DNA of 64,000 nucleotides from Botryllus schlosseri (GCA_051294905.1 CM119374.1:17856001-17920000); one strand, 5' to 3'; shown: positions 16,201 through 35,110, counted from the stretch's first letter. Notes: generated by a model not told the origin, from the letters alone. Numbers and translations are program-made.

Positions 16201-16616
16201 ATAAGACGATATGGTCCTTGATATTTCGGTGCGTGAACAACTGAACATGAACAACAACGAATATCATTAGACTCAATTCTGTGAATTATGCGTATTTTTA
16301 TTATTGTTTTATTCTGATATTTTTTATGAGCAGCAGTTGTGGTCCTGCACGTAGTTTTAGGCTACTCGTATCCCGGTCTACATAAACCTGTAGTTTATAG
16401 CTCAAGTATTTTTATCACATAACAGGACATCAGAAGGGCCGGGACGCTGACCCAAAGCTTTTTATGCCGATATTGAGCAACCAAAAATTACCGCAAACCG
16501 TCATCGCATTTTTCCGTTTCGGCGTCCCACACGAGGCAAACCGGTTGGATCGAGATACAAAGGAAAATTCCCTGGACAAACACGAATTGGAGCCTTTGAA
16601 AGACGAACTGATATAA
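1216..16616 (+). CDS. SLC5A8-like: Sodium:solute symporter, SLC5A8/SLC5A12/NIS-like, 13 exons, ~612 aa
   Basis: Phase-consistent GT-AG exons 1216-1273, 3373-3476, 4257-4445, 4692-4757, 4821-4940, 6489-6643, 6720-6863, 10654-10875, 12378-12490, 12554-12711, 15175-15389, 15462-15565, 16426-16616 sum to 1839 nt. Family motifs: DYATFG, YFFGGKEM, GGMNAVVWTDVVQ, GCDP, PGLAGAFVAAVFSGSLSTLSSGLN. The exact paralogue cannot be assigned. Confidence 0.93.
5487..5874. mobile_element. hAT-type MITE, family A copy 2 (SLC5 intron 5)
   Basis: Same TIR and interior as 513-940; flanks GTGCAAGT/GTGCGAGT (7/8). Confidence 0.88.
7129..7161. repeat. (TA)n microsatellite
   Basis: Run of TA dinucleotides with minor interruptions. 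Confidence 0.9.
7193..9729. mobile_element. Non-autonomous hAT-type element (2.5 kb) with GTAATC subterminal repeats
   Basis: TIR CAGACATGGGG...CCCCATGTCTG; perfect 8-bp TSD CTTCCGAT; clusters of GTAATC/GATTAC at both ends. Confidence 0.9.
8284..8549 (-). mobile_element. tRNA-derived SINE, family 1 copy 1
   Basis: Minus-strand head GGCGAGATAGCGCAGTGGT (A box) and GGGTCCGACTCC (B box-like); homologous to 37597-37878. Left boundary approximate. Confidence 0.8.
12978..13172. mobile_element. hAT-type MITE (195 bp)
   Basis: TIR CAATGTTCCCTCTAA...TTAGAGGGAACATTG; perfect TSD GGTTGAAG. Confidence 0.92.
13205..14671. mobile_element. hAT-type non-autonomous element with nested fragments
   Basis: TIR TAGGG(G/A)TGGTGTGAAC...GTTCACACCATCCCTA; flanks GTTCAAAC/GTTCTAAC (7/8); GTGAAC repeats at the right end; another hAT end (CAGGCCTGGGCAA) nested at 13229. 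Confidence 0.8.
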
Positions 16617-18874
16617 GCCATAAGACATGATAAATGACTTCACCTTTATTATAGGCCTATATAGGTAGGCTAATTCGCATATAGGCTACCAGGACTCAGC
16701 ATTCATTTTATCATCCAAGAAATACCCCAACGGAAGAAGAGTTAGAGGGAAATGTATAAAACTCAATTGTTGTCACCTCTAAACATAAATCATATAAAAT
16801 TATATGGTGGGATATATCTATTAAAAGTATGGAATAGTCGGCTTATCGACTGAAATCCTTGGATTTTCGTTCAAATAAAGGAGATGTATAGAGAAAGACT
16901 CGGTAGTCCAGAGAGCCCCTGGCGTCTTATTCTATGTTATGCAACATAGCCATGCGTTACGCACACCGTATAGTACAGTATACAACGTACAGTAACACCA
17001 TACTGTCATATATGACCAGTTGACCACGTAGGCCTACTTTGTGTGTTTTGTCCCAGTGGCGGCTCGTGACAATATCGGGTGGTGGGGCAAGGGCTGCGAG
17101 CGACTTTTATCAACATTTCGTCACAATGGCGTTTTCCAACGTAAAAAAGTAACTTTATGATGGTCACATGAATTTCCCGACAACAGTGATTTTAACGTAG
17201 GTGCCGCGAGAAGTTTGCCGGTGAGCCGTGACTTGAAGTGTGGTAACAAATGTTTTATTCATTTATTTTTAATCAAAGGATTATTTTACAAATTGTACGT
17301 GAACTAAGAATCGTCCCTATGCCACGAATCAAGTATCAGGTCATCCTTAGTAGCATGCGTTTTGATTTCATGGTAGAGTTATAGATTACGCAAATCGATA
17401 GACCCTAAAATCCGACCGTCACCCCAAATTCGAAATCCGGATCCAGTCCGGCCAGGTAAAAAAACATTGAAATCCTGCTCCTGCTCCTGAACCGGACTGT
17501 GGCCATCTCTGGTTACGACCAGGTGATAATAGGCAACCAAAGCGGAGGCACCCGGCGTACGATTGGATCGATAGACTGGACAACTTCTAGACCTCTCATT
17601 TTCGCTCTAAAGGCAACTGCGTAAACTACGTACGGAATAAAGATTAAATACGATTCATGTTCGCACTTGACTTGACCTGACTAATTCCAACGACTAGAAC
17701 TCGAGAGATTGCGTAAGCCTAACTGGAAAGGTCAACGAGTTCGGACACATACGCAATTGTTATCTCATAGATTGGGCCTGTCAATATGGGCTCGAAAGTC
17801 ACGTGACTTTTCAGCATAGCAACCACCGTCTGGGGCCAAGCGCGTTTCTGGTATCATCTTCTCTGCGACAGTAATGCATTTGTATGTCGCAATTTCTGCT
17901 ACTGCCCTGGTCTTTGCTGTCACATTTTGTGTTTGTGTTACAGGATTGATTTTTTTTTTCGTGCAGATAGATGACAATGTGTAGTATTCAATTAACATGA
18001 TGGAGTATAGAGCAGTTTAAGATAGCCTATGTCAAACAAGTAATTCCAAGGTTTAGTACTTTCATCTGGACCTACTAACTATTCATCGTATGGCTGCAGC
18101 ATTATTATGCTTCAAGTGTATACTTATCGACACCGAGACAGTGATCAGTCAACATCGGAGATTAGTAATATTGTAACATTACCGTACCGTGTTAAATTTG
18201 ATTTCAGATGGATTTGGTTAAGCTACTTTTACGATTTGCGAGTTCTTCAAAAATGATCCGAATCTGGTCAAAAGAAGTCAAAATGATTTAGACAACGACC
18301 ATCCAACATCAGCAATGTATGGTGGAGATGGCAGTGAATTGGGAAACAGTCAGTTCAGCCATGAGTATAATGAAAGTTTATGACGTGGAGGTTGGTAATT
18401 GCAAAATTACCTGAAAGATTGGGGAAGCGTTGGATTTGAGTTCGAATCCCACTTGACGCAAGTGGGTCGGAGCCTTATCTGGACTCCCCACTGCTTACCT
18501 AACTACATGAGCAGCGTCATGTAATCAAGCCCAGATGGCTAAGTAAAGCCAATGAGGCTCTAAAATCGGCATCACTGACGAGGACATATGAAAGCAAGCA
18601 AGAGAAGAAAGATGGTCAACGAATGGGTGACAGGAACTCAGAAAAAGCTTATCAAAAAGCAAAGAGACCCTTGAACTTGAAAGCATTTATTTTGTGGTGC
18701 AAACAGACGATCATCATCATCATTGGTTTATTACCAATTTTATCAGTTCGATACACCACAAAATGCGATACAATGAAAAGACAGGAAGATGTCGAAGCGA
18801 CTGGGAGTAGTATATGGAATCAGGACACTTATCTTGACCTAGGCGATGTAAAGAGGAGGCATGCACATGCACAC

Positions 18875-19542
18875 TAGGGCTTTTCAGAAATGACTTTTTT
18901 TCTCAAATCGTACTGGGACTACTGGCTACTTGATAAAATTGTTAGGGTTACTTAATTTAGGCCTACACACAAAATTTGGTTCAATTCCAGCCAGTAACCG
19001 CTTTGGTACAGAAGTAAGTTTCTATTTATTATTTTAAATAAATAATAAAAAATTCGAAAATTTTCTGTTCACCCCGTGAAAGTGTTAGGCTGTCTATAGA
19101 AACGATGCTCACCAAATTTGATTCAATCCCAACCAGCGGAAGCGGAATTATCGCCGTCGAAAAATTTGGATTTGAATAAAATAGTATTTACGGTGAGCAC
19201 AACTATAATAAATAAACAAAGAATCGGTCACCGTAAATACTATTTTATTCAAATCCAAACTTTTCGACGGCAATAACTCCGCTTCCACTAATTAGAATTG
19301 AACCAAATTTGGTGAGCATCGTTTCTATAGACAGCCTAACGCTTTTATGGGGTGAACAGAAAATTTTCAAAATTTTTATTATTTATTTTTCCATTATAAA
19401 TAGAAACTTTCTTCTCCTGTAGCAAAGCGGTTACTGGCTGGAATTGAACCAAATTTTGTGTGTAGGCTTTAATTAGGTAACCTAACAATTTTATCAAGTA
19501 GCCAGTACGATTTGAGAAAAAAGTCATTTTTGTAGAGCCCTA
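18875..19542. mobile_element. Almost fully palindromic hAT-type MITE (668 bp)
   Basis: Starts TAGGGC, ends GCCCTA; ~320-bp arms around a ~30-bp spacer near 19197-19227; perfect TSD ATGCACAC. Confidence 0.93.
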
Positions 19543-19791
19543 ATGCACACTGAATGAAAGTGAAGAAGATAGCATTTCCACCTTTTCAGAGTACTATGTA
19601 ATATTGCATACTTGCCGGAGTGTTATATTTTTTAAAGTAGTTTTAGGACATGTTTGCGGCACTTTTGTGATGTGTGTATTGATAGATATCAAGTGTCCCT
19701 ATTCTACCAAATCAAGATCATTAATAGACTTGAGCGTTTATGAAGAAAGTCTTCATTTTGAAATGAGTCGGTCATCGGTGATACTATAGTA

Positions 19792-20461
19792 CAGGGCCGG
19801 CCAACCCGTGGCCCGCGGGCCACATGTGGCCCGCGAGAAGGTTTTGAGTGGCCCGCGAAGTAATTTCCGAAATTTCTAATATCAAAAATGGATTGCATAG
19901 ATTGTGAAATTGCAAGGCAAACCAAAAATTTGATTAGTTTGGCCGCAACACTTGAGATGTGATGACTAGAATATCAGTTCCGACGCATTGACAGATCCAT
20001 CAGCCAGTCACATATTGGTATATCTTCGTACACTACAATAAAGCAGAATAATTTGCGATAGATTTATCAAAAGTAAAAATCTTCTGCAAGCTTAGCGCAA
20101 CATGTTGTCACTCGATTCCTTGTTTTTTAATATTGTTGCCCTTTTTGTGAAAATGGAAGAACGCCTGATGTATCAGATTGAGTCCAACTATATTCGCGAT
20201 TACGAGACAAAGTGTCGTTCAACATATGCGACCTGCGTTTGCGCTCGCAGTAAGATCGTTGGATATGGAACCTAGGGACGGAAAGGTTGACGCATGTTGG
20301 TCGCAGCTTTCGATACCGATATGTCCATGCGCCGAATAGCCCATTTCTCGCAAACTTAGCCCAGCGATATACGACAGGCTCGCAATATAGTCAAGTGACA
20401 ATATTATTGACCTATGAACAATCGAATGTGGCCCTTTGGCTGAAAAGGTTGGCCGGCCCTG
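19792..20461. mobile_element. hAT (Buster/Charlie-like) MITE, 670 bp
   Basis: TIR CAGGGCCGGCCAACC...GGTTGGCCGGCCCTG; perfect TSD CTATAGTA; GGCCCGCG subterminal motifs. Confidence 0.92.
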
Positions 20462-20869
20462 CTATAGTACTTGCCCAGCATCACAAGTACTTTGACAAGT
20501 GCAGGGCAGCTTGTGCACTGCATACTCAAAACTTATGCCATTTAATTGTTTTGGACCCGACGATTACCTCAAGATTCTGAATAGAAGAACTACCTAATTC
20601 TGATATTATAATATTTCCACAACAATACTTTCTTGATCTTGCATACTCTCGCTTGATTTTACAAAATTCTAAGAGTGCTGACGAAATCAATAACTGGCGA
20701 ATAAATTCGACAAATTCACAACTTGAGAATGTATTTCCTTTGTACCGAGAATGAAACAAATAGAATGTAGGTATTGGTCACAGATTAGGTATTCCTGATT
20801 AATGTTGCCAACTTACCATAGACGGATGCAATTTTGACTCAAGCTATACACTGCTACTGTGGAGGTAGT

Positions 20870-21560
20870 CTTAAACTGACGACTCACTTAAACACACAGA
20901 GTTGGCTTGAAAATGGGCAGCCATAAGCAATACAATTGATAGGACTGTGTTGGTATATTGAAATTGACGAGAATAACAGCAAGCAACATAACTGTGAGTA
21001 CTCCATGGGAATCTGTAGTTATTGCGTTTCTGCATCGCGTCGACGTAAGTATTTCCCATTGACAAGCCAAGATCCTGAACGGCGTTTGTGTAAATTTAGG
21101 GTGCTCTGGCCCTGAGAACGACGGTAAGGGATACCAGTGTTGTTGGGTCCGTATGGTTACGAGGCTGGTCTCACACAAATGACCTACTGGTGGCATTGGT
21201 GTACCATATGTCGACAACAATGTCAGTTCCTTCCCAGCGTTTTGGGTGGATTTCTTCCAAGTTCAGGAAGTATATGTGGTCCCGACTTTTAAGGCCGGAA
21301 GCGTCTCCAAGTGTTCGCTCCACCTCCCTACGGTGACGTCATTTTATAGACAGTTGAGCTGCATTTTCTCACCGTTCAAGGGGTAAATAGCGTGTGTGTG
21401 CTTCTCGTTCTTGCGATAAAGGAGATGGTGTCTTCTGGAGAGCAGTTTTTGGCAGAGATACCGATTGCATCATACAAAATGCCTGGATCAGAGATGCCCC
21501 GGATATGGTTTACATATAGCGCACAGTGCAACTTCACTAGCACAGCAATCAGGTACAGAT
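20870..21560 (-). pseudogene. Ty3/Gypsy integrase C-terminal remnant
   Basis: Frameshifted minus-strand reading RWSEHLETLPALKVGDHIYFLN...HPKRWEGTDIVVDI...LVTIRTQQH resembles the recalled Gypsy integrase tail (RWSEHT..L..L.VGD.V.IQN..P.RW..TG.VV..R.T.RNR). Boundaries approximate. Confidence 0.55.
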
Positions 21561-22019
21561 TAGTGAGACTAGCATCAATGTTTGCATTGATTTGTTAAAC
21601 ATCTGAAAGTAGGTATCTATAAAGAGAATAAAATGGTTATGAATTAGCCTACCCTCTGATTTTTGTTCAAGAAATTTGTGTAAATTTTGTATAGGGCAAT
21701 GCAAAAGCTACTGAAGGTAGAAAATTTTAAATTTGGCTAAACTAGCCCAATTTGTTATACATTTTTTTGAAAACTCAACCATTTCATGGCGTAGCCAGTA
21801 AAATTCTATAAAACTATTTTATTTTTTCAATAATTTTTTTTTTGAAGAATCTGATAACTTCACTTCTGCATGTTGGAATTGAGCCAAATCTAGTGTGCAA
21901 CCTTTCTTCGAGCCAACCTAACAATTTTGTTCATGAGACAGTGAAATTTGAAAAAAAAGTTGTTTTTGAACAACATTGATGTATAGAAACTTGATCAAAA
22001 TTTAAAAAAAAACATTGGC

Positions 22020-22690
22020 TACAGTGCCAGTACTAAATTATACGAAGTAGTGTCACGAGTAACAGCAAGACCTGGTCTTCCATTAAAAGAATCTTTACAT
22101 TCCAGAGTTAGAATGATACCAAATTTTAAATCACTGCATCATCACAAAAACCAAGTCGAAAGTACGGTACTCTTGTCCTTGTCCGGCAATAGCAGTCTTC
22201 TCAGCACTATCCTTGAAACAATCAATAACTTCCTTCTGATTGGCATGGTTCAACATAAATTTGGCTGACCGAAATTCTTGATTATCTTTTTCGATAAATG
22301 GCACAGATATCTTAATAGCTAACCGGTGCCTGCAGTTGATGCATCTATTCTTAGGACAATTTTACTATATAAACACTTTAATAAAAATCTAATAATTGTG
22401 GGTTATCTTAAATCATTTGCTATTGAAGCTGACTTGATTACGCTGTCTTGGGGCACACAAAATACCGGTGTGACATTTGATACCACCAAACAAACAAGTC
22501 AACATAGATCAAATGTTAATTATATTTATCATTCTATCTAGCCTTATTAATTTCAGTCACCTTCCTGTCGTTTTCTGGCAATTTAGAAGTCGATGGAAAG
22601 ACTATTCCGAATTGTTTTCTCATCCATTATAACAAATTGGCACGTTATACCCTGGCATTTTGCGCGGCTGCAAAACAACATAAACCTACC
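22020..22690 (-). pseudogene. THAP-domain transposase N-terminal remnant
   Basis: Minus-strand MPGYNVPICYNG*ENNSE*SFHRLLNC...*LKLIR resembles a decayed THAP zinc finger; position fits the transposase of the 17769-29343 element. Confidence 0.4.
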
Positions 22691-23104
22691 TAGTTGGTGT
22701 CTAAAAGTCCTGAAACTAGCTAATAAGTCATAGAAGATAACATAAAACCCAGAACTGTACTTCAAACAACCTCACTGAGACAGAAAATACGATTTGAAAA
22801 CAGACCAATAACGCAAATTAACCACTGTGATTCTAATAGAATTCTCGGGAATTATATATGTTCATGTGAAACACAAAAAATAGCAGGGGCATCATGGTAT
22901 TTTTCAGTTTATAATTTTTACCGGAATTCCAAAAACCACTTGCCAGATTTTACAATATTTATTTTGTGACAGGTTATCGGGATACCTGATCAAGAATGCG
23001 ACTCAATCAGTAAACACAGGTGCCCAACTGTAACACAGATTTGCAATAAAAATGGTTTGAAATAACTTAGGAATAGGAACAGACCAGAATCACAACCAGC
23101 TCAA

Positions 23105-25165
23105 TGAAATATCGCGTTGATCAATACATAGACACACTTGAATTTCCGACAAAATCGATACATATATAATTGAAGAATTACCCATGTTGGGACCCTAAAG
23201 AAAGATATTCAACCGCATCAGTGGACGTAAGTACCCCTAATAAAAAATTATTGACGATCATTAAGCTTCGGAATGACAAAGGAACAGAACAGAATCCGAA
23301 TGAATTCGGTGGAATATCACCTCGTTCAATACTTAGACACACTTGAATTACCGACAAAATCGATACATATATAATTGGAGAATTACCCATGTTGGGACCC
23401 TAGAGGAAGATATTCAACCGCATCAGTGGACGTAAGTACCCCTAATAAAGAATTACTGACGATCATTAAGCTTTGGAATGACAAAGGAACAGAACAGAAT
23501 TCGAATGAATTCGGTGGAATATCACCTCGTTCAATACATAAACACACTTGAAATCCCGACGAAATCGATACATATATAATTGAAGAATTACCCATGCTGG
23601 GACCCTAAAGGAAGATATTCAACCCCATCAGTGGACGTAAGTACCCCTAATGAAGAGTTATTGACAAACAATAAGCTTCGGAATAACTCAGGAACAGAAC
23701 AGAATCCAATCGAATTCGGTGGAATATCGCGTCGTTCAATTCAAAGATACACTTGAATTTCTGACAAAATCGGCACATATATAATTGAAGAATTACCCAT
23801 GCTGGGACCCTGAAGGAAGATATTCAACCCCATCAGTGGACGTAAGTACCCCTAATGAAGAGTTATTGACAAACAATAAGCTTCGGAATAACTCAGGAAC
23901 AGAACAGAATCCAATCGAATTCGTTGGAATATCGCGTCGTTCAATCCAAAGATACACTTGAATTTCTGACAAAATCGGCACATATATAATTGAAGAATTA
24001 CCCATGCTGGGACCCTAAAGGAAGATATTCAACCCCATCAGTGGACGTAAGTACCCCTAATAAAGAATTATTGACGATCATTAAGCTTCGGAATGACAAA
24101 GGAACAGAACAGAATTCGAATGAATTCGGTGGAATATCACCTCGTTCAATACTTAGACACACTTGAATTACCGACAAAATCGATACATATATAATTGGAG
24201 AATTACCCATGTTGGGACTCTAGAGGAAGATATTCAACCCCATCAGTGGACGTAAGTACCCCTAATGAAGAGTTATTGACAAACAATAAGCTTCGGAATA
24301 ACTCAGGAACAGAACAGAATCCAATCGAATTCGGTGGAATATCGCGTCGTTCAATCCAAAGATACACTTGAATTTCTGACAAAATCGGCACATATATAAT
24401 TGAAGAATTACCCATGCTGGGACCCTAAAGGAAGATATTCAACCCCATCAGTGGACGTAAGTACCCGTAATAAAGAATTATTGACGATCATTAAGCTTCG
24501 GAATGACAAAGGAACAGAACAGAATTCGAATGAATTCGGTGGAATATCACCTCGTTCAATACATAAACACACTTGAAATCCCGACGAAATCGATACATAT
24601 ATAATTGAAGAATTACCCATGCTGGGACTCTAAAGGAAGATATTCAACCCCATCAGGGGACGTAAGTACCCCTAATGAAGAGTTATTGACAAACAATAAG
24701 CTTCGGAATAACTCAGGAACAGAACAGAATCCAATCGAATTCGGTGGAATATCGCGTCGTTCAATCCAAAGATACACTTGAATTTCTGACAAAATCGGCA
24801 CATATATAATTGAAGAATTACCCATGCTGGGACCCTAAAGGAAGATATTCAACCCCATCAGTGGACGTAAGTACCCCTAATGAAGAGTTATTGACAAACA
24901 ATAAGCTTCGGAATAACTCAGGAACAGAACAGAATCCAATCGAATTCGGTGGAATATCGCGTCGTTTAATCCATAGATACACTTGAATTTCTGACAAAAT
25001 CGGCACATATATAATTAAAGAATTACCCATGTTGGGACCCTAAAGGACGATGTTCAACCCTATCAGTGGACGTAAGTACCCCTAATAAAGAATTATTGAC
25101 GATCATCAAGCTTCGGAATTACTCAGGAGCAGAACAGAATCCGATCGAATTCGGTGGAATATCCC
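23105..25165 (+). repeat. Tandem array of ~10 x 205-bp units (left arm)
   Basis: AATTACCCATG recurs every 205 bp (about 23177-25022); the ORF track repeats at 205-bp spacing. Confidence 0.97.
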
Positions 25166-25415
25166 GTTAGTCAATATAATAATACTTCAAGTTACTCCTA
25201 CACCGTGATATGTACAATTCATTTATGTTGTTGTACATGATAACTAACCAAATTGGCGCCGGCTTTGCATCGAACACAATTTCCTTTTTAAAACAGTTCC
25301 AAGAATATATAGTCTACTAGTTAGAGTATAGCGAAAAGTAACGATATAGCGTGTGAAATTGTGTTTTCAAATGTATAGGTGGAGGGGGGTATATTCAGTT
25401 TATTTTCGTCTACTC

Positions 25416-25784
25416 CAGTGGTTCCCAACGTGGGCGATTTGGCGGTCTAGGGGGGTGAAAATGACGAAGAGGGCGATAGGGGGGCGAAAATGGGAAAATG
25501 GACAAAGGGGGCGACAGGGCGAGAAAATAACGAAGGAGGAGATAGGGGTGCGATGACGCGTCAAAACGGATGACCTTTTTTTTCTTCATTTAGTCAACCC
25601 ACGGTAATTTCGTTACAAAAGTGTGTCAAATTAGACATCGAGCCGAAAATTTGACCTTTTTTTAGTCAACCCGCCGGTGATTACAGTTTGTATGCCCAAT
25701 TTTCGGTAAACAAAATTTGGGGGGCGATGATCGGTGTTGACCTTGAAAAGGGGGCGATGGGTCGAAAAAGGTTGGGAACCACTG
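25416..25784. mobile_element. hAT (Buster-like) MITE inside the foldback spacer
   Basis: TIR CAGTGGTTCCCAAC...GTTGGGAACCACTG; perfect TSD GTCTACTC. Confidence 0.93.
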
Positions 25785-26048
25785 GTCTACTCCTTCGGTA
25801 TAATTTACCAATGTAGATGAGCAGGCACCGTTGGTTGGATCACTAGACACCATTCTATCTAGGATTTCAGAAAACTTTGAAATATAGTCGCTCTTATGAT
25901 CAAGTATAGTGCGGCGCGGATGGACAACTACTCTGATATCTTGTCTTTTCAATTCGCTGGCCCTACTTCGGTCCAACTCTAAGGTCGGATTCTTGAAATG
26001 ACCGTGATCCTGTCGTAAAACCCCGATATTATTCATTTACTCACACGG

Positions 26049-26240
26049 CAGTGTTGGGATCAGGTCACTACCTTCGAGTCACGAGTCATCTCGAGTCATT
26101 GCACATTTTGACTCGAGTCAAATTAAGTCAATCGATTTTCGAAGGTGACTTTAGTCAAGTCAAGTCACTCATTTTTTGGAGGTGGCTTGAGTCGAATCAA
26201 GTCGAATCAAGTTAAGTCACGAGAAAAGTCGCAATTCAAC
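26049..26240. mobile_element. Fragment of a GACTCGAGTC-rich MITE family
   Basis: Starts CAGTGTTGGG; dense GAGTC/GACTC repeats as in other copies in the window. Right end not found. Confidence 0.6.
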
Positions 26241-26929
26241 TCAAATTGAATTTTCGAAGTATGAGTGATAATTCATAGTCATTAGCATCACTCGTTGCGT
26301 GAAAGACAGCTAGATTAATTGAATTAAATTTGATTGAATCAAACAACGAATATAAATTTAAATACCTGAGTAACCGTGTAGCTGAATGCTACAGTCTGGT
26401 AGTATCAGCAGATCTAGGCAGTGGTTCTCAACCTTTTTGTCTCCGCGGACCCCCTTGAACCTGTCACAGACCCCCGCGGACCCCCAAGTTTTAGATCGGA
26501 TTTAGCTCGATTATCGAGTAACCGTTATCTGCCTTGCCTGCAAATATCGACCTTATGCTATAGGGATCAAGCAACCAGAATGCTAACATTCCCAACGGAT
26601 TGTCTGATAGCATGCAAGGTTATAGTTGTTGAAGAGAGATTTCTAAAATATGAAATCTGAAGTTTTAAGCAGAACAATAACTACCAATGGCATGTATATC
26701 GCGCGAAGCGTTCAAAAAATTTCAGTTCAGTGCAGCTTTGCGCCCCACTTCAGATGCTTTCACCTATCCTAGTTTGAGAACCAAAACAGATGAATGTGGA
26801 GGATTGCAAATACTACGATATCACCGTACTCGAATTTGCACAGCCCTAGTGATATCATACTTTGACAGAGCGACGCGTTCTCTCTTAAATTCTGCTGATC
26901 ATGTGGTAATTGAACGAGAGGACGCGCGT

Positions 26930-28960
26930 ACGTTCTGTTCCTTTGTCATTCCGAAGCTTGATGATCGTAATTAATTTTTTATTAGGGGTACTTACGTCCA
27001 CTGATGGGGTTGAATATCTTCCTTTAGGGTCCCAAAAGGGGTAATTCTTTAATTATATATGTGCCGCTTTTGTCAGAAATTCAAGTGTATCTATGGATTG
27101 AACGACGCGATATTCCACCGAATTCGATTGGATTCTGTTCTGTTCCTGAGTTATTCCGAAGCTTAATGATCGTCGATAATTCTTTATTAGAGGTACTTAC
27201 GTCCACTGATGGGGTTGAACATCTTCCTTTAGGGTCCCAAAAGGGGTAATTCTTTAATTATATATGTGCCGCTTTTGTCAGAAATTCAAGTGTATCTATG
27301 GATTGAACGACGCGATATTCCACCGAATTCGATTGGATTCTGTTCTGTTCCTGAGTTATTCCGAAGCTTAGTGATCGTCAATAATTCTTTATTAGGGGTA
27401 CTTACGTCCACTGATGGGGTTGAATATCTTCATTTAGGGTCCCAGCATGGGTAATTCTTCAATTATATATGTATCGATTTCGTCGGAAATTCCAGTGTGT
27501 CTATGTATTAAACGAGGCGATATTCCACCGAATTCATTCGTATTCTGTTCTGTTCCTTTGTCATTCCGAAGCTTAATGATCGTCAATAATTCTTTATTAG
27601 GGGTACTTACGTCCACTGATGGGGTTGAATATCTTCCTTTAAAGTCCCAGCATGGGTAATTCTTCAATTATATATGTATCGATTTCGTCGGAAATTCCAG
27701 TGTGTCTATGTATTGAACGAGGCGATATTCCACCGAATTCATTCGGATTCTGTTCTGTTCCTTTGTCATTCCGTAGCTTAATGATCATCAATAATTCTTT
27801 ATGAGGGGTACTTACGTCCACTGATGGGGTTGAATATCTTCCTTTAGGGTCCCAGCATGGGTAATTCTTCAATTATGTATGTATCGATTTCGTCGGAAAT
27901 TCAAGTGTGTCTATGTATTGAACGAGGCGATATTCCACCGAATTCATTCGGATTCTGTTCTGTTCCTTTGTCATTCCGAAGCTTAATGATCGTCAATAAT
28001 TCATTATGAGGGGTACTTACGTCCACTGATGGGGTTGAATATCTTCCTTTAAAGTCCCAGCATGGGTAATTCTTCAATTATATATGTATCGATTTCGTCG
28101 GAAATTCCAGTGTGTCTATGTATTGAACGAGGCGATATTCCACCGAATTCATTCGGATTCTGTTCTGTTCCTTTGTCATTCCGTAGCTTAATGATCATCA
28201 ATAATTCTTTATGAGGGGTACTTACGTCCACTGATGGGGTTGAATATCTTCCTTTAGGGTCCCAACATGGGTAATTCTTTAATTATATATGTGCCGATTT
28301 TGTCAGAAATTCAAGTGTATCTATGGATTGAACGACGCGATATTCCACCGAATTCGATTGGATTCTGTTCTGTTCCTGAGTTATTCCGAAGCTCATTGTT
28401 TGTCGATATTTCTTTCATAAGGTCACTTACGTCCACTGATGGGGCTGAATATCTTCCTTTAGGGTCCCAACATGAGTAATTCTTTAATTATATATGTGCC
28501 GATTTTGTCAGAAATTCAAGTGTATCTATGGATTGAACGACGCGATATTCCATCGAATTCGATTGGATTCTGTTCTGTTCCTGAGTTATTCCGAAGCTTA
28601 TTGTTTGTCAATATTTCTTTCATAAGGTCACTTACGTCCACTGATGCGGTTGAATATCTTCCTTTAGGGTCCCAACATGGGTAATTCTTTAATTATATAT
28701 GTGCCGATTTTGTCAGAAATTCAAGTGTATCTATGGATTGAACGACGCGATATTCCGCCGAATTCGATTGGATTCTGTTCTGTTCCTGAGTTATTCCGAA
28801 GCTTATTGTTTGTCAATATTTCTTTTATAAGGTCACTTACGTCCACTGATGGGGTTGAATATCTTCCTTTAGGGTCCCAACATGGGTAATTCTTTAATTA
28901 TATATGTGTCGATTTTGTCGAAAATACAATTATATCTATATATTGAACAACGTGATATTT
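26930..28960 (-). repeat. Tandem array of ~10 x 205-bp units (right arm, inverted)
   Basis: CATGGGTAATT-type motif recurs every 205 bp (about 27036-28881); reverse complement of the left-arm unit. Confidence 0.97.
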
Positions 28961-30024
28961 CATCGTATTGGTGGTGATTCCGGTCTGTTCGTATTCCTGA
29001 GATATTTCAAACCATTTTTATTGTAAATTTGTTTTATAGTTGGGTACCTGTGTCTACCGATTCAGTCGCATTCTTGATCAGATATCCCTTTAACCTGTCA
29101 CAAAAAGCTATTGTAAAATCTGGCAAGTGGTTTTTGGAATTCTGGTAAAAATTCCTAACTGAAAAATATCATGATGTCCGCGCTGTTTTTTGTGCTTTAC
29201 CTGAACATATATAATTCCCGAGAATTCTATTAGAATCACAGTGGTGCAAATTAACACAGGGAGCGCCTATCTAATATAGTTGTTTGGCCCCAGCGAACCA
29301 CAAGTCACGTGACTTTCGAGCCCAAATTGAATCCAGAACATCAATTTGAATGGTCTTTGAAGAACTAAGGACAGCAGCCTCGGAACTTCGGTCTCGGAAC
29401 AACGTAGGACATTTTGGCCTTGAAACTGGAGACTGTGACACAACACATACGGCTTACTGTCTATAAGTCTGCTGCGAAATCGCCGTTGGAAAATATATTA
29501 ATATATAAATACATGAATAAAAGCCGTAACTTAGTATACTGTTACAAGAAATCATCGACAAGTAGCATACGCAATCTCATAACCCATTCCGGTATGGTAC
29601 ACTGTCAAAATCAATGCAAACAGACGAACACCGAACTTTAAGTAAAATAGATCGAGGAATAGGCTGATCGAATGATCAGCTGTTAGCCGACATCGAAAAT
29701 GAAATAGCTATCGCAATTGACAGGGGATTGTAAGCAAATGGTTTGAAGGCCACAATTTCACAGTGAAATGGACATTGGCGAACATAAAATTATGCGAATA
29801 CTTGAATGCAAACCGAGAATCTTGGTTAGCTGTTTCATGCGATCATCGAGATATACCATTGGAAATATCATCACCGATCTCGTTATGGAACGCAGACTAT
29901 AGATTAGCACAGACCGACACCGGCTTTTGCGTGAGATCCGCAATGACGTAGGTAGGCTAAGTATCAGATCAGCGCGCATCTCTACCATACTCGACCTCGA
30001 AAACGAAATAACTGCCTCAATCAT

Positions 30025-30197
30025 TGAGTGTCAACTTTAAGACTTGGCACCGCGTTCGATACTAAAATCAAGACATACCGTGTGAAAGCTCATGACAGAT
30101 CTAGGTATGGAACATCGTTAAAATCAATAGAGATCAATAACGGCTTTTGCGTAAATTTGTTGGCGATAAATGAAGAGTCAGCTCTTACTCGACTTTG
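30025..30197 (+). repeat. 173-bp direct duplication, copy 1 (copy 2 at 33481-33653)
   Basis: Identical to 33481-33653 except one T/C difference (AGAGATCAAT vs AGAGACCAAT). Confidence 0.97.
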
Positions 30198-30283
30198 TTT
30201 TTACCAGCATTGTGCTCATACTCAATTTGGTCTAGTTGACTCTTTGGCTATCACCACTCAAAATTTATTATCCTGAACAAGCA

Positions 30284-31865
30284 ATGGCTGGCACTGCACG
30301 CGCTCCGAATTTCAGCATAGCTGAAAAAAATGGATTTATCGACTTGATTGGAAAATACCCCGTTTTGATTACCAGCAAAACTAGTGGACAGAGCGATAAG
30401 GATTTTAGAAGGAATAAAGAAGCGGCCTGGCGCAAACTTGTCAGTGAATTCAATTCATCAGGAATTGCACAAGTGGAGAGAAATGAGGACAAGTTGAAAA
30501 AACTCTGGAAAAATTTGAAGAGCGATTGTAAAAAGCATGAGGCGCAACGAGTACGGGAGCAAAGAAAAACTGGTGGTGGAATACCTGACCTTCAACCAAC
30601 TGCATCAGACATGATCTATGCCAAGATCAAAAGTAGGTGCTGCAGTAATCCATCATTCCTTGTGTAGACTACATAATAATTCAGGATTGTTTTTCACAGG
30701 TTTGATACCAAGTCAAATAAGTAGCATCCCCAGTCAATTTGATGATGATTCAATATCAGTACAAGTGCAACAAGAGTCATATGCAGGCTGCGAAACACAA
30801 ATGGAGGCGCCATCTTTCAGCACCACAGAAAATGTAGCAGGCATAGAACTGCCATGCTCTGAAATAGGTCTATATATATCTGTATATACACTTGAATGGT
30901 GATAACATGATCTAATACGATTTATCTTTAGGTTCTTCTGAAACTTCTATGGTCGAACTTTTTTCCGTTCCGACACTGAACCGTAAGTATACAATACAAT
31001 TTCTATTCACTGCTTGAGAATTTACTGGATATTTTCTGATAGATCCTAGTTCACCTGATCTGTCAACGTCTGGGGTTGCAGTTGGAACTTCAACTTCAAC
31101 TTCTACTTGCTCCGTCATGAACAATCCACTACCAAATCAAGGTAAATTCGCATTCATTTCTGATTTAACCATTGTCTATTTCTGGGATGGCCGGACATTT
31201 GTGCGGCCGTCGACACGTAATTCAATTAGTATGTGCTTGCGGCCGTCAACATGCAAATTGAATTTCGGAATTGAGAGATTTTAATTATTCTTGAAATTTT
31301 CAATTCGGCTTCATTTTTCAACTACAATATAGTAATTGAATTATGCAATCTGATCCCCAGAATATAGTAGCCTACAGATGCGAGCAGCAGAGGAAAATAA
31401 TTCAGAATAGATTCACTTGAATTTTTCCAAATAAGCATCAGGGATCTTGACCACTATAATTATGAAAACCCGCTTTACTTGCCAAAGCATGATAAAATCA
31501 CTTTTCGCAGACCAGGAACGGACTTGAAAAGTGCTGGTCTACGGACCAGAGGTTGCCGCCCCTGCTATCAACTGCGGAATTTTGGACATATTGCAGCAAT
31601 ATAAATATCAACATTTTTTTTAAACTCATGGTATTTATCATTTTCATCTTTCCAAACAGCTCGCTCTAAGCCTAAGGCCACCTATGAAGAAATGAGGTTG
31701 GATGTACTAAACGCTAAATTGGAGGAGAGCAAGGCTAAAAAAAGACTCCTGGAAAAGGATTTGGAAATGAGAGTTACGGAGACGAGAATGAGACAAATTG
31801 AGCATGATCTCAAAGTGAATCATTATAAAAAAAAGTCCGAGATGCTGGACAAAAAGTATCAGTGA
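30284..31865 (+). CDS. Harbinger Myb/SANT-like DNA-binding protein, 5 exons, ~290 aa
   Basis: Exons 30284-30632, 30700-30867, 30932-30982, 31043-31141, 31660-31865 (873 nt, open, GT-AG). Motifs RAPNFSIAEK, KEAAWRKL, KLKKLWKNLK, KTGGG and a C-terminal coiled coil. Confidence 0.88.
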
Positions 31866-32191
31866 ATTTTTGCTCACTGAATCCAGTGTCTGAACCAATT
31901 TTCTGTATACTTCGTTCAATTTCGTTGACACGCCATTCTTTTCTTGCCGAGGTTTTCCACACTGCTCATGCTATCCTGTATTGCAATTTATAAAATTGCT
32001 TCCACCGTTTTTCTACACCGCTTAAGCGCTTATGCTATCCTGCTATACTGTTTTATGCTATCCTGCTATACTGTGTTAAACTTACTATCAGCCGCTATGC
32101 GAATTTTCATTTTTACATGACACACGCAATAAAGCTCATGTTTGTTTCTTTGTAATTGAAATGGAATGTGTAGAAAAAGAATATTCATGGA

Positions 32192-33253
32192 TTAGTTTGA
32201 AAAGTGTCTCAAAATTATGCTTTGTCGCTCGGATTGTCCAGAAGGAGTCGATGCGACATGAGGGTGGTCTGAAGCATCTGGTTCGAATACGTCATCAACT
32301 TCCGTTTCATCAGTCATCTGTCGTGTCCGAATTGCCAGATTATGAAGGCAGGTTATGGCCACAACGATATTCGTGGAATTGCTGAGCTTGGTCCTCATCG
32401 GTATAGCTAAGGCGAAAAATCTTTTTTTCAGCATGCCAAAGCACTGCTCTATGCGAGAGCGGGTTACAATATGAGCGTGATTATACTTTTTTTCGGCCGA
32501 TGTTCTTGGTGATAATAGTGGTGTAAGTAAGTAGCTCCTCAGTGGATATCCATTATCCCCAAGCAAATATCCATCGATTTGATTATCTTCGAATCGATCA
32601 CGGATCACCGAATTGTCAAAGATTCTTGAATCGTGACAAGATCCATACCAACGTGTGACAATGTTTGTTACGACTCGCTGTGCATCACATATCATTTGAA
32701 CGTTCAATGAAAAATAACCTTTTCTGTTCCGGAACACCTCTGCATTATCACCGCCAGGGGATATTATGGGTAGATGAGTACAATCGATTGCTCCAACAAC
32801 GTTTGGGAAGCCTGCAATGTCATAAAATTCTTGCTTTACTTTGGTGAGGTCAGTAGGAAAATTCAAAAACAGGAGCTTCTTGCGGCATATGGCACGGGTA
32901 ATTTTGTGAATGCTTCTGTGAGCAGTTACTTTGCTTATACCAGCTAGGTCACCATCAGTCTGTTGAAAATGGCCATCCGCGAAAAACCGTAAGGCGCAAG
33001 TTAGTTGTAGTATTGGCGGAAGAGCATGATCTCTGCAGGTCAATTCTTCATCATCTTTCAACAGCCCAAAAAGATAGTGAGTTGCGTCTTTTGAAAACCG
33101 GAATCGCAGTCTGAACTCGTTGTTCGAATACCTTTCGAAGGGGTTCTGAACATCTGCGAGATACTTTCTTGGCAGTCTGTACTGTTCATCATCATCGTCA
33201 GTAAATTCCAACAACTCCAGCAATTCCATAATCCTCCACTGATCTCCTTTCAT
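32192..33253 (-). CDS. HARBI1-like Harbinger transposase (DDE_Tnp_4), 353 aa, intact
   Basis: GAIDCTH, NRKGYFSLNVQ, GSCHDSRIF, YLLGDNGY and RSRIEQCFGMLK motifs give a complete D-D-E triad. Confidence 0.95.
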   Translation of the reverse strand: MKGDQWRIMELLELLEFTDDDDEQYRLPRKYLADVQNPFERYSNNEFRLRFRFSKDATHYLFGLLKDDEELTCRDHALPPILQLTCALRFFADGHFQQTDGDLAGISKVTAHRSIHKITRAICRKKLLFLNFPTDLTKVKQEFYDIAGFPNVVGAIDCTHLPIISPGGDNAEVFRNRKGYFSLNVQMICDAQRVVTNIVTRWYGSCHDSRIFDNSVIRDRFEDNQIDGYLLGDNGYPLRSYLLTPLLSPRTSAEKKYNHAHIVTRSRIEQCFGMLKKRFFALAIPMRTKLSNSTNIVVAITCLHNLAIRTRQMTDETEVDDVFEPDASDHPHVASTPSGQSERQSIILRHFSN

Positions 33254-33480
33254 TCATCCACGAGCAACTCAAAACAATAACAATCTGGCCTCGGTTCCGT
33301 GTTGAACTCGCTACAGCGACGAAGTAGACAGTAATTACTCGCAACTAACGGACTTGGCCGAGCGCGGCGCCAAATTGACATTTGAAACCGAATTAAGACC
33401 GCCGTCGCCTGGCGTCTCGGCCAAGTCATTCACTGGCCTTAAGCCAGGTCTAAATTAAGACAACTTTTTGAAACCCACCC

Positions 33481-33653
33481 TGAGTGTCAACTTTAAGACT
33501 TGGCACCGCGTTCGATACTAAAATCAAGACATACCGTGTGAAAGCTCATGACAGATCTAGGTATGGAACATCGTTAAAATCAATAGAGACCAATAACGGC
33601 TTTTGCGTAAATTTGTTGGCGATAAATGAAGAGTCAGCTCTTACTCGACTTTG
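33481..33653 (+). repeat. 173-bp direct duplication, copy 2
   Basis: Begins with TGA immediately after the Harbinger right end. Confidence 0.97.
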
Positions 33654-35110
33654 GAAACGAAATTACCACCCACATAGTTCAGTGACAAACTTAAAACTTG
33701 TTACATCGGTCGATACTAACACTTACCGTGCCAAATGTCATGACCGATCTCGGTATAGAACATCGTCAAAATCAATGGAGACCAATACCGGCTTTTGAGT
33801 AAAATCCGTTTGCTGTACTATGTACATGATAGATCAGCACACACTGAACTTCGGAAACGGAATTACTACCATTATCTTTAAGTAGCAAGCCTGAAACTTG
33901 GAGCAGTGTTAAATACTACCTTCACGACATATCATACCAAGTTTCAAGAATTATCATGGTGCGAAACACCGTCAAAATCGACCTATACCAGCAAAGGTCG
34001 ACTCAACGCATATTACGGTAACCGAGTTCAGATATAGATACGATTGTTACATCACACCTTAGGGGCGAGTAGGCATATTTGCCCCGGTTGCTCGGCCATT
34101 TTACGAATAGGAGAGAGTAAATCACCGTTTCTATATTGTGCGCGGCTTTGAGAGAATAGATAGTGAAAGCTTGTTATGAGCGCTACCGGGGCAAGCCCCG
34201 GCTAGGCATTCACAAAGCGAAAACACAGAAGAGAATTCGATTTTCGCAGAGACTTCGCTATGTATGGGCGTTTGCAAGCGAAAGCACAAGAACGCGGGTT
34301 TCGCTGTGATCTCGGTATATATTGATTGCTGTGCGTCTATAAATGGTTAAATTGTTATTGAACAGAATTTTAGGTGGGGCAATGCCCCAGTTGCCCTATA
34401 GGACGAGCCGCCACTGTTTTGTCCTATATAATAACGTGTGCAACTGTGCATGTGCAATTGTGCATTCATAAATACCTCATGGGACCACCCATTTCGCTAT
34501 CATACTGAATCTTAATTCTACAAATGCATAATTCCCGAGTAAAACCGTCGTTGAAGAAGTATTGTGTATAATATACGTTAACCTGTCAGGAAAGAACTTA
34601 CGCGAGGCCGGTAAGAAGAAACTTGCAAATGTATTAAATTCATAATTCCTAAGAACTACAATAAATGTCTGACCCCAAAGCTTGGTTCGCCTCGCAGCAT
34701 ACAGTTCCCCTGTAGCAATTTCAGGAAGAACAGAAATTAGAATAAAATGGAGCATTAGAAAAAAATCATCTAGCTGTCCTATTCTGGTAGGATGATCGTC
34801 TTGGCGACTGTTCGAAAAAGATAGTATCCTTTTCAAACCGGAAAATGGGCCACGGCCCAACAAAGGTCGGGAACCCCTGTCGTACGCTGACTAACTTGAC
34901 CTATCCAGCAAATATAACGCAGGCTTGGACGAGCACGTGATTTATTAAAAATCGTCACAACAGTCCACGCGGCGGACCGTGACGATTACGACCGGAAAAC
35001 TGTCGCGTTAGTTCCGTTGTTAATGTTTCGGGTAAACTCGTCATGTCGACGCAGAAAGTGATGTCTTCACCAGCACTACAGTAGCAGGCCGGCACACAGA
35101 CCATGTGTCG

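What the first reader, a model, noticed from the sequence alone, without database searches (positions are those of the whole stretch)
17054..34416. Hidden 17.4-kb matryoshka: nearly the whole intergenic space is one TSD-bounded element
Seen: matching 14-bp TIRs and a perfect TTTTGTCC duplication 17,363 bp apart. At least four nesting levels lie inside: outer hAT > ISL2EU (17769-29343) > foldback (22821-29245) > hAT MITE (25416-25784), plus two more MITEs, a Gypsy remnant, a tandem repeat and a Harbinger with intact genes. The outermost (oldest) TIRs and TSD are pristine while the enclosed ISL2EU is badly decayed. Inference: either the unit moved recently as a giant cargo-carrying transposon, or the locus is a tolerated TE sink, possibly a piRNA-cluster seed, between two convergent genes.
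Basis: partly seen in the sequence, partly recalled or inferred. Interest (0 to 1): 0.8.

Follow-up and report, generated by a model that had tools for sequence, protein, structure and literature searches.

The report
Young hAT element stuffed by later insertions
The 17.4-kb stretch is one copy of a very common, very young 2.4-kb hAT-type transposon that other mobile elements later landed in, which is an ordinary transposon nest, and nothing shows it is a giant cargo-carrying transposon.

Summary
The 14-bp inverted ends (17054-17067 and 34403-34416) and the 8-bp duplication TTTTGTCC are exact.

The interpretation does not hold. The ends belong to one copy of a 2,369-bp non-coding hAT element. 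Its 14-mer end occurs about 3,450 times in the genome. Three collinear pieces (17054-17783, 29325-30197, 33481-34416) rebuild the whole element and differ from the subfamily consensus by only 0.5%. The outer layer is therefore young, and its clean ends are normal: 35 of 38 sampled family copies, from 1.9 to 11.6 kb, have perfect 8-bp duplications.

Two blocks split it:
- An 11.5-kb block: a 3.7-kb non-autonomous ISL2EU-like element that carries one inherited MITE, one private hAT MITE and a private 6.4-kb foldback.
- A 3.3-kb Harbinger fragment that has only one true end and is flanked by a 173-bp duplication of the host element.

The three junction 30-mers tested are each unique in the 495-Mb assembly, so no second copy carries this interior. 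About a quarter of sister copies carry their own single insertion. A contig from another individual stops matching exactly at 17053, which suggests an empty allele. Other first-stage notes of this scan (unchecked) report nests inside hAT MITEs elsewhere in this genome.

Verdict: an ordinary nest, of low interest.

The parts
17046..17053 (.). Left copy of the 8-bp target-site duplication TTTTGTCC
   Evidence: A contig from run X5 stops matching exactly at 17053.
17054..17783 (+). Outer non-autonomous hAT element, piece 1 (canonical positions 1-730), including the left TIR CAGTGGCGGCTCGT
   Evidence: 99% identical over its full length to 39 of 39 scored non-self genomic hits and to L001, L002, L003 and L010.
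17787..29324 (+). Insert A: a non-autonomous ISL2EU-like element. Its TIR is TGGGCTCGAAAGTCACGTGACTT. The canonical form is about 3.7 kb; here it is 11.5 kb because of nested elements. Bases 17784-17786 (ATA) and 29325 (A) at the junctions cannot be assigned.
   Evidence: Canonical copies L014-L016 align to 17787-18867, 19543-19792, 20462-22822 and 29246-29325. The TIR 21-mer occurs 79+76 times, with a modal pair spacing of 3.65-3.77 kb. No ORF gave a Pfam hit.
18875..19542 (.). hAT-like MITE inside A, TIR TAGGGC..., TSD ATGCACAC. It was inherited: the nearest A copy (L011) has it at the same place.
   Evidence: L011 aligns without a break across 18630-19792 at 97.8%. Ends read.
19792..20461 (.). 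hAT-like MITE inside A, TIR CAGGGCCGGCCAACC, perfect 8-bp TSD CTATAGTA. It is absent from all seven other A copies examined.
22823..29245 (.). Foldback element inside A. Its arms are inverted arrays of about 10 copies of a 205-bp repeat (23075-25167 and 26932-28959). The flanking duplication is up to 10 bp (GCAAATTAAC). The loop includes a MITE at 25416-25784 that other foldback copies share.
   Evidence: Loop 25101-26827 is 96.5% identical and contiguous with L021. The A/foldback junction is unique in the genome.
29325..30197 (+). Outer hAT element, piece 2 (canonical positions about 731-1603)
   Evidence: 99.1-99.5% identical to L001, L002, L003 and L010.
30198..33480 (+). Left-truncated PIF/Harbinger copy, 3.28 kb of a 4.7-kb element. 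The right terminus ...GAAACCCACCC is present; the left 1,415 bp, including the left TIR, is missing. The Myb-like ORF (30284-30667, +) and the 353-aa DDE_Tnp_4 transposase (32192-33253, -) are intact.
   Evidence: Pfam hits. 99.6-99.8% identical to full-length copies. Truncation shown. Full-length copies have the TIR GGGTGGGTTTCAAA and a TTA TSD. One aa difference in the transposase.
30025..30197 (+). Left copy of the 173-bp duplication of host hAT sequence that flanks the Harbinger fragment
   Evidence: Both copies align to canonical positions 1431-1603. The two copies differ at 1 of 173 positions.
33481..34416 (+). Outer hAT element, piece 3 (canonical positions 1431-2369). It includes the right copy of the 173-bp duplication (33481-33653) and the right TIR.
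   Evidence: 99-100% identical to 39 of 39 scored non-self hits and to the canonical loci.
34417..34424 (.). Right copy of the TSD TTTTGTCC

Best explanation
A 2,369-bp non-autonomous hAT element inserted into TTTTGTCC in the space between two genes. It was presumably moved in trans by the family's 4.55-kb autonomous element, which encodes a 696-aa hAT transposase. This happened recently, during a large burst of the family.

The copy was then hit in place by other active elements:
1. A non-autonomous ISL2EU-like element entered at canonical position about 730. It already carried one MITE.
2. A hAT MITE and a 6.4-kb foldback entered that element. This happened either here or shortly before the element arrived.
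3. A Harbinger fragment with one true end was joined in at canonical position about 1603 by an aberrant event (one-ended transposition or break repair). That event also duplicated 173 bp of the host.

The composite is a passive nest. Its intact ends and TSD reflect its youth and do not show that it moved as a unit.

Shown: the anatomy, the youth of the outer copy, the uniqueness of the junctions, and the frequency of nesting in sister copies. Inferred: the order of the events, mobilisation in trans, and the mechanism of the Harbinger event.
For: - **Family size.** The 14-mer TIR occurs 1730+1720 times in the genome, against 7+7 for the reversed control.
- **One element.** Three collinear pieces rebuild the canonical 2,369-bp element at 99% identity.
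- **Youth.** The copy shows 12 substitutions and one 3-bp deletion against the consensus of 7 canonical copies, 0.5%. Sister copies range from 0.13% to 0.88%.
- **Perfect TSDs are normal.** 19 of 20 position-sampled copies have them, as do 16 of 18 larger copies up to 11.6 kb.
- **hAT identity.** L049 has the same TIR, an 8-bp TSD and an intact 696-aa ORF with DUF4371 and Dimer_Tnp_hAT. Its ends are 78-88% identical to the window element.
- **No second composite.** The three junction 30-mers tested are unique in the genome at up to 3 mismatches.
- **Nesting is common.** 5 of 20 copies of the same young subfamily carry one insertion each, at five different positions. The A family also ranges from 3.65 to 18.3 kb.
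- **The inner families are themselves young or active.** The Harbinger is 99.6-99.8% identical to full-length copies. A is 96-98% identical to L011.
- **Likely polymorphic.** Junction-spanning words occur only in the probable source sample. A 721-nt contig from another study's run (X5) matches 16657-17053 and then continues 306 nt unlike the stretch laid. Allelic divergence in the flank, about 2-6%, exceeds the element's 0.5%.
Against: - Cut-and-paste movement leaves no second copy, so unique junctions cannot strictly exclude that the composite, or the 11.5-kb inner block, was assembled elsewhere and moved here.
- Four or five hits on one young copy is in the tail of expectation. My rough estimate, from about 0.1 insertions per kb in sister copies, is about 1 in 1,000 copies.
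- A is 2-3.6% from its nearest relative, more than the outer element's 0.5%. It therefore had a history elsewhere, during which it may already have gained the foldback and the MITE.
- The A/hAT junctions are not a clean AT duplication.
- The internal junctions were not checked against reads, so the continuity of the composite rests on the assembly.
- The letters of the X5 contig beyond 17053 were not seen.
Confidence: 0.82

Rival explanations
1. Giant cargo transposon. The whole 17.4-kb composite, built at another locus, was mobilised through its intact hAT ends and inserted here as a unit, creating the TTTTGTCC duplication.
For: Both TIRs, 730 and 936 bp of subterminal sequence and the TSD are intact. 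An intact family transposase exists. TSD-bounded family copies of 7-11.6 kb exist.
Against: No other copy in 495 Mb shares any of the three tested internal junctions. The large sister copies examined owe their size to their own different insertions or to the transposase gene. The clean TSD needs no special explanation in this family. Nothing observed requires movement of the unit.
Confidence: 0.08
2. Partial cargo. Only the 11.5-kb inner block (the ISL2EU-like element already holding the foldback and both MITEs) moved as a unit into the hAT copy, so the locus saw three events, not five.
For: A is 2-3.6% from its closest relative L011, against 0.5% for the outer element, so it had a history before it arrived. 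It demonstrably carried MITE 18875-19542 along, since L011 shares it. A-family TIR pairs up to 18.3 kb apart exist.
Against: The A/foldback junction is unique in the genome. The foldback and MITE 19792-20461 are absent from all seven other A copies examined. This is a sub-variant of the main explanation and does not exclude it.
Confidence: 0.3
3. The two ends are independent hAT insertions, or the product of recombination or misassembly, and the matching 8-mer is chance.
For: The family is very abundant, about one TIR per 144 kb.
Against: The pieces are complementary, collinear, non-redundant parts of one 2,369-bp element on one strand. An 8-mer match has a chance of 1 in 65,536. A contig of the probable source sample crosses the left junction without a difference.
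Confidence: 0.02
4. The locus is a selected TE trap, a nascent piRNA cluster, and not a neutral nest.
For: Five private layers in one intergenic spot. The contents come from several active families.
Against: There are no small-RNA data. Sister copies elsewhere are hit at a comparable rate per kb. The insertion appears absent in another individual, which does not suggest a fixed functional locus.
Confidence: 0.05

Closest known systems
Non-autonomous hAT elements, that is internally deleted derivatives mobilised in trans, as Ds is by Ac (my own knowledge)
   Same: 8-bp TSD and short TIRs beginning CAG. No transposase in the 2,369-bp element. An autonomous relative with the same TIR encodes a transposase with the hAT dimerisation domain.
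   Different: At 2.4 kb it is long for a MITE. Its ends are only 78-88% identical to those of the autonomous candidate found, so the true master may be another copy.
Nested transposon clusters in intergenic DNA, the classic case being nested retrotransposons between maize genes (my own knowledge; not checked in the library)
   Same: Successive insertions of younger elements into earlier ones, each with its own TSD, filling an intergenic space.
   Different: All layers here are DNA transposons, and all are very young (no more than about 1-3% diverged). The outer layer is a cut-and-paste element that could in principle still move.
ISL2EU group of the PHIS superfamily (AT TSD, target A|AT|T; PMC4482050)
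   Same: Insert-A family copies are flanked by AT on both sides in L011 and L015; the left flank is AT in all five copies read, and L014's right flank is not AT.
   Different: No transposase was found for this family in the loci I could fetch. In the window copy the AT dinucleotides are offset by one extra A at each end, and one base of the canonical target is missing.
PIF/Harbinger (TWA TSD, DDE transposase plus a Myb/SANT protein; PMC4482050)
   Same: Two ORFs with DDE_Tnp_4 and Myb_DNA-bind_5. Full-length copies are 4,705 bp with TIRs and a TTA TSD.
   Different: The window copy has one terminus only, no TWA duplication, and a 173-bp host duplication, so it did not arise by standard transposition.
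Macrotransposons, in which two nearby Ac/Ds elements mobilise the DNA between them (my own knowledge)
   Same: A large stretch bounded by hAT ends and an 8-bp TSD.
   Different: Here the ends are the two halves of a single element, not two elements, and there is no evidence of movement.

Membership tests
hAT superfamily (non-autonomous member) | 8-bp target-site duplication | tested here: met
   TTTTGTCC on both sides. 35 of 38 sampled family copies have perfect 8-bp TSDs and the other 3 differ at 1 base.
hAT superfamily (non-autonomous member) | Short terminal inverted repeats | tested here: met
   14-bp perfect TIR CAGTGGCGGCTCGT, present about 3,450 times in the genome.
hAT superfamily (non-autonomous member) | An autonomous relative with the same ends that encodes a transposase with the hAT C-terminal dimerisation domain | tested here: met
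   L049: 4,550 bp, same TIR, perfect TSD, 696-aa ORF with PF14291 and PF05699. The Atlas neighbours are ZMYM1-like hAT proteins.
hAT superfamily (non-autonomous member) | No transposase of its own | tested here: met
   tblastn with the family transposase finds nothing in the window. The longest ORF in the three pieces is 104 aa.
ISL2EU (insert A) | AT target-site duplication (PMC4482050) | tested here: inconclusive
   Left flank is AT in all 5 other copies; right flank is AT in 2 of the 3 read (L011, L015; L014 not). The window junctions read GTCA-AT-A|TGGG... and ...CCCA|A-AT-TGAATCC against the canonical target GTCATATTGAATCC.
ISL2EU (insert A) | PHIS-type DDE transposase in an autonomous relative | not tested
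   Canonical 3.7-kb copies have no ORF over 116 aa.
PIF/Harbinger (30198-33480) | DDE_Tnp_4 transposase plus a Myb/SANT-like second protein | tested here: met
   PF13359 at E 1.5e-30 and PF13873 at E 1.3e-12.
PIF/Harbinger (30198-33480) | Two TIRs and a 3-bp TWA duplication | tested here: not met
   Met by the full-length copies L057 and L058 (TTA). The window copy lacks the left 1,415 bp and is flanked by a 173-bp duplication instead. It is a fragment of a family member and is not a complete element.
Foldback elements (22823-29245) | Long inverted arms built of tandem subrepeats around a loop, with a short flanking duplication | tested here: met
   Arms of about 2.2 kb, 90% complementary, each about 10 copies of a 205-bp unit. 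Flanking duplication of up to 10 bp. About 15 further loci have the same arms.
   The three internal junction 30-mers tested are each unique in the genome at up to 3 mismatches.
piRNA cluster | Dense, uniquely mapping small RNAs | not testable with these tools
No small-RNA run was examined.

The most novel reading that the evidence does not exclude
The composite is still a working 17.4-kb hAT vehicle. With both hAT ends intact, it could be, or has been, moved by the family's transposase. It would carry a Harbinger transposase and Myb gene pair that has lost one of its own ends. In that case one transposon family would be ferrying the machinery of another.
Probability: 0.07. Interest if true: 0.5.

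Novelty: new member of a known kind. Interest (0 to 1): 0.15.

Why it matters
Mainly as a correction. A pristine TSD around a messy interior does not show that the interior travelled with the ends. It can simply mean that the outer element is young and the genome is full of active transposons.

Two by-products are useful:
- This genome holds a hAT family in a very recent, probably ongoing, burst. There are about 1,700 end pairs, one subfamily is 99% identical, an intact transposase exists, and this insertion is probably polymorphic.
- Copies of that family serve as dated landing pads. From them one can read the insertion rate of other families, about 0.1 hits per kb within about 1% divergence.

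Tried and rejected
- **Second copies of the composite.** A whole-element search and three junction patterns found none.
- **An alternative haplotig with an empty site.** The left flank 16330-17053 is single-copy in the assembly.
- **Reaching an allelic contig through the ORF next to the right TSD.** The look-up of encoding contigs has no record of it.
- **A Gypsy remnant inside the element.** Pfam on ORFs and tblastn with a Gypsy pol, an RT and the hAT transposase gave no hit between 17054 and 34416.
- **An autonomous ISL2EU-type copy for insert A.** The loci in hand have no long ORF.
- **A preference of the Harbinger for hAT targets.** The flanks of three Harbinger copies, chosen without regard to hAT, show no hAT sequence. 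L008 (Harbinger inside a hAT relative) was picked as a large hAT pair, so it is ascertainment and carries no weight.
- **Orientation of the left flanking gene from a spliced RNA contig.** The two aligned pieces are separated by 100 unaligned letters in the record, so no splice site could be read.
- **Literature on amphioxus hAT MITEs.** The search returned nothing specific. I did not establish the organism.
Full report
**1. Observation**

The 14-bp ends and the 8-bp duplication are exactly as described. CAGTGGCGGCTCGT lies at 17054-17067 (+) and 34403-34416 (-). TTTTGTCC lies at 17046-53 and 34417-24. In the window these are the only two matches to the end sequence at up to 2 mismatches, where 0.06 would be expected by chance.

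**2. What the ends belong to**

The 14-mer occurs 1730 times forward and 1720 times reverse in the 495-Mb genome. The reversed control occurs 7+7 times. The window is G000:C4:17856001-17920000.

The first 715 bp of the element is 99% identical over its full length to all 39 scored non-self hits. The last 936 bp is 99-100% identical to all 39 scored non-self hits. Where both ends of a copy are in the lists, they usually lie 2,369 bp apart.

Four such copies (L001, L002, L003, L010) align to the window in three collinear pieces:
- canonical 1-730 to window 17054-17783
- canonical 729-1603 to window 29323-30197
- canonical 1431-2369 to window 33481-34416

All three are at about 99% identity. The two ends are therefore the two ends of one 2,369-bp element that has been split twice.

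Stitched together, the window copy differs from the majority consensus of seven canonical copies by 12 substitutions and one 3-bp deletion, which is 0.5%. The seven copies themselves range from 0.13% to 0.88%. In sequence terms the outer layer is young.

**3. Is it hAT?**

Yes, on three counts.
- Twenty end pairs taken in positional order from contig C1 range from 1.9 to 3.1 kb. 19 of them have perfect 8-bp TSDs.
- Eighteen larger pairs, from 2.9 to 11.6 kb, have 16 perfect TSDs and 2 with one mismatch.
- One copy (L049, 4,550 bp, perfect TSD) has a single intact 696-aa ORF with DUF4371 and the hAT dimerisation domain. Its nearest Atlas clusters are ZMYM1-like hAT proteins. Its ends match the window element at 84% (left 340 bp) and 78-88% (right 1.8 kb).

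The window element has no similarity to that transposase. It is a non-autonomous family member.

The TIR-defined family contains several subfamilies, 75-99% identical to the window copy. The 2,369-bp form makes up 3 of the 20 in the positional sample.

**4. First split: 17784-29324**

The inserted block ends in TGGGCTCGAAAGTCACGTGACTT and its inverse (17787 and 29324). That 21-mer occurs 79+76 times in the genome, and paired ends are most often 3.65-3.77 kb apart.

Canonical copies (L014-L016) align to window 17787-18867, 19543-19792, 20462-22822 and 29246-29325. The window copy is therefore a complete 3.7-kb element with three additions:
- **18875-19542.** A hAT-like MITE with TSD ATGCACAC. 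The closest relative L011 (96-98% identical) has it at the same place, so it was inherited.
- **19792-20461.** A hAT-like MITE with TIR CAGGGCCGGCCAACC and a perfect TSD CTATAGTA. It is absent from all seven other copies examined.
- **22823-29245.** A foldback. Its arms are inverted arrays of about ten 205-bp units. The flanking duplication is up to 10 bp, GCAAATTAAC. It is absent from the other seven copies.

The foldback family has about 15 other loci. Its loop, including the MITE at 25416-25784, is 96.5% identical and contiguous with L021. That MITE is therefore also inherited and is not an event at this locus.

The 3.7-kb element has no ORF with a Pfam hit. L011 and L015 are flanked by AT on both sides; the left flank is AT in all five copies read, and L014's right flank is not. 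This fits the AT duplication of ISL2EU (PMC4482050). The label rests on that feature alone.

In the window the junction is not clean. The canonical target is GTCATATTGAATCC. The junctions read GTCAATA|TGGG... and ...CCCA|AATTGAATCC.

**5. Second split: 30198-33480**

This block encodes a 353-aa DDE_Tnp_4 transposase and a Myb/SANT-like protein. It is 99.6-99.8% identical to copies elsewhere.

Those copies continue to the left with shared sequence where the window copy stops. The full element is 4,705 bp, with TIR GGGTGGGTTTCAAA and a TTA duplication. The window copy lacks the left 1,415 bp, including one TIR. It keeps both ORFs, with one amino-acid change in the transposase.

It is flanked by a 173-bp direct duplication of host hAT sequence (30025-30197 and 33481-33653) and not by TWA. 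The two copies of the duplication differ at 1 position.

This is not standard Harbinger transposition. I infer a one-ended or break-repair event. The scan has a separate note on this feature (s1-291546).

**6. Did the unit move?**

Thirty-base words across the hAT/A, hAT/Harbinger and A/foldback junctions each occur once in the genome, even at 3 mismatches. A search with the whole 17.4 kb found no locus that combines the parts in this arrangement. It did find another diverged hAT relative with a foldback inside it (L018).

Sister copies show that nesting is routine. Of 20 copies of the same young subfamily, 5 carry one insertion each, of 0.5-1.7 kb, at five different positions. That is about 0.1 hits per kb.

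From that rate, two hits on the 2.4-kb element plus two on the inner element would be expected in roughly 1 copy in 1,000. This is my own rough arithmetic. In a family of this size it is the expected tail and does not count as an anomaly.

Cut-and-paste movement cannot be excluded in principle, because it leaves no second copy. Nothing here calls for it.

The inner 11.5-kb block may well have arrived with some of its cargo. It is 2-3.6% from its nearest relative, more than the 0.5% of its host, and it certainly carried one MITE along.

**7. Polymorphism**

In contigs of the probable source sample (X2), a 142-nt contig crosses the left junction (16937-17078) without a difference. Only 25 of its letters lie inside the element, fewer than the 31 on each side that the tool asks for before a record counts as bridging.

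A 60-base query made only of junction-spanning words is held only by runs of that sample. This rests on just 2 sampled words and is weak evidence.

In a run from another study (X5), a 721-nt contig at normal depth matches 16657-17053. It then runs on for 306 nt that match nothing in 14800-19300. The match ends exactly at the last base of the TSD. This is what an empty allele would look like.

I could not see the contig's letters and had no further read-laying run, so this remains a strong hint and falls short of proof. The X5 contigs differ from the window's flank by about 2-6%, much more than the element differs from its consensus. This fits an insertion younger than the alleles around it.

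**8. Setting**

The exon to the right (38444-38629, minus strand) is a prenyltransferase alpha-subunit repeat, so that gene's 3' end points towards the element. RNA-type contigs cover 15174-15388 and 16420-16605 on the left. I could not fix the orientation of the left gene. The element fills most of the space between them.

**9. Verdict**

The paradox of clean old ends around a decayed interior came from equating 'outermost' with 'old' and 'non-coding' with 'decayed in place'. Interest is low.

The by-products are an apparently active hAT family with an intact transposase, a one-ended Harbinger insertion with a long host duplication, and a usable internal clock for insertion rates.

**Limits**
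- The internal junctions were not checked against reads.
- The organism was not identified.
- The ISL2EU label was not tested at the protein level.
- Small RNAs were not examined.

Noticed in passing
window 30025-33653: The Harbinger copy has only its right terminus, lacks 1,415 bp on the left, keeps both ORFs, and sits between two copies of a 173-bp stretch of the host element. It looks like a one-ended or repair-mediated insertion, not standard TWA transposition.
   Followed up: partly
L049 (G000:C1:14104430-14108979): A 4,550-bp hAT element with the same 14-bp TIR, a perfect TSD and one intact 696-aa transposase ORF (DUF4371 + Dimer_Tnp_hAT). It is the likely autonomous source of the burst.
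   Followed up: partly
L011:1394-5067: A Gypsy-type pol ORF of 994 aa (protease, RT, RNase H, integrase start) that looks intact. It is nested in another copy of the ISL2EU-like family.
   Followed up: no
L007 with L044 (G000:C1:13417098-13428183): An 11.1-kb TSD-bounded copy of the hAT family. It holds two inverted ORFs of 859 and 768 aa with reverse-transcriptase hits.
   Followed up: no
G000:C5:12928522-12946840: A pair of ISL2EU-like termini 18.3 kb apart, larger than the window copy. It was not fetched.
   Followed up: no
L018 (G000:C6:16653870-16663145): A diverged relative of the hAT family (83-89%) with a foldback of the same satellite family inserted near its left end.
   Followed up: no
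window 16159-16309: Contig depth in DNA runs jumps about 100-fold over roughly 150 bp of the otherwise single-copy left flank. This indicates a small high-copy repeat.
   Followed up: no
window 17784-17786 and 29325: The junction of the ISL2EU-like element with its hAT host has an extra A next to each terminus and lacks one T of the canonical target, instead of a clean AT duplication.
   Followed up: partly
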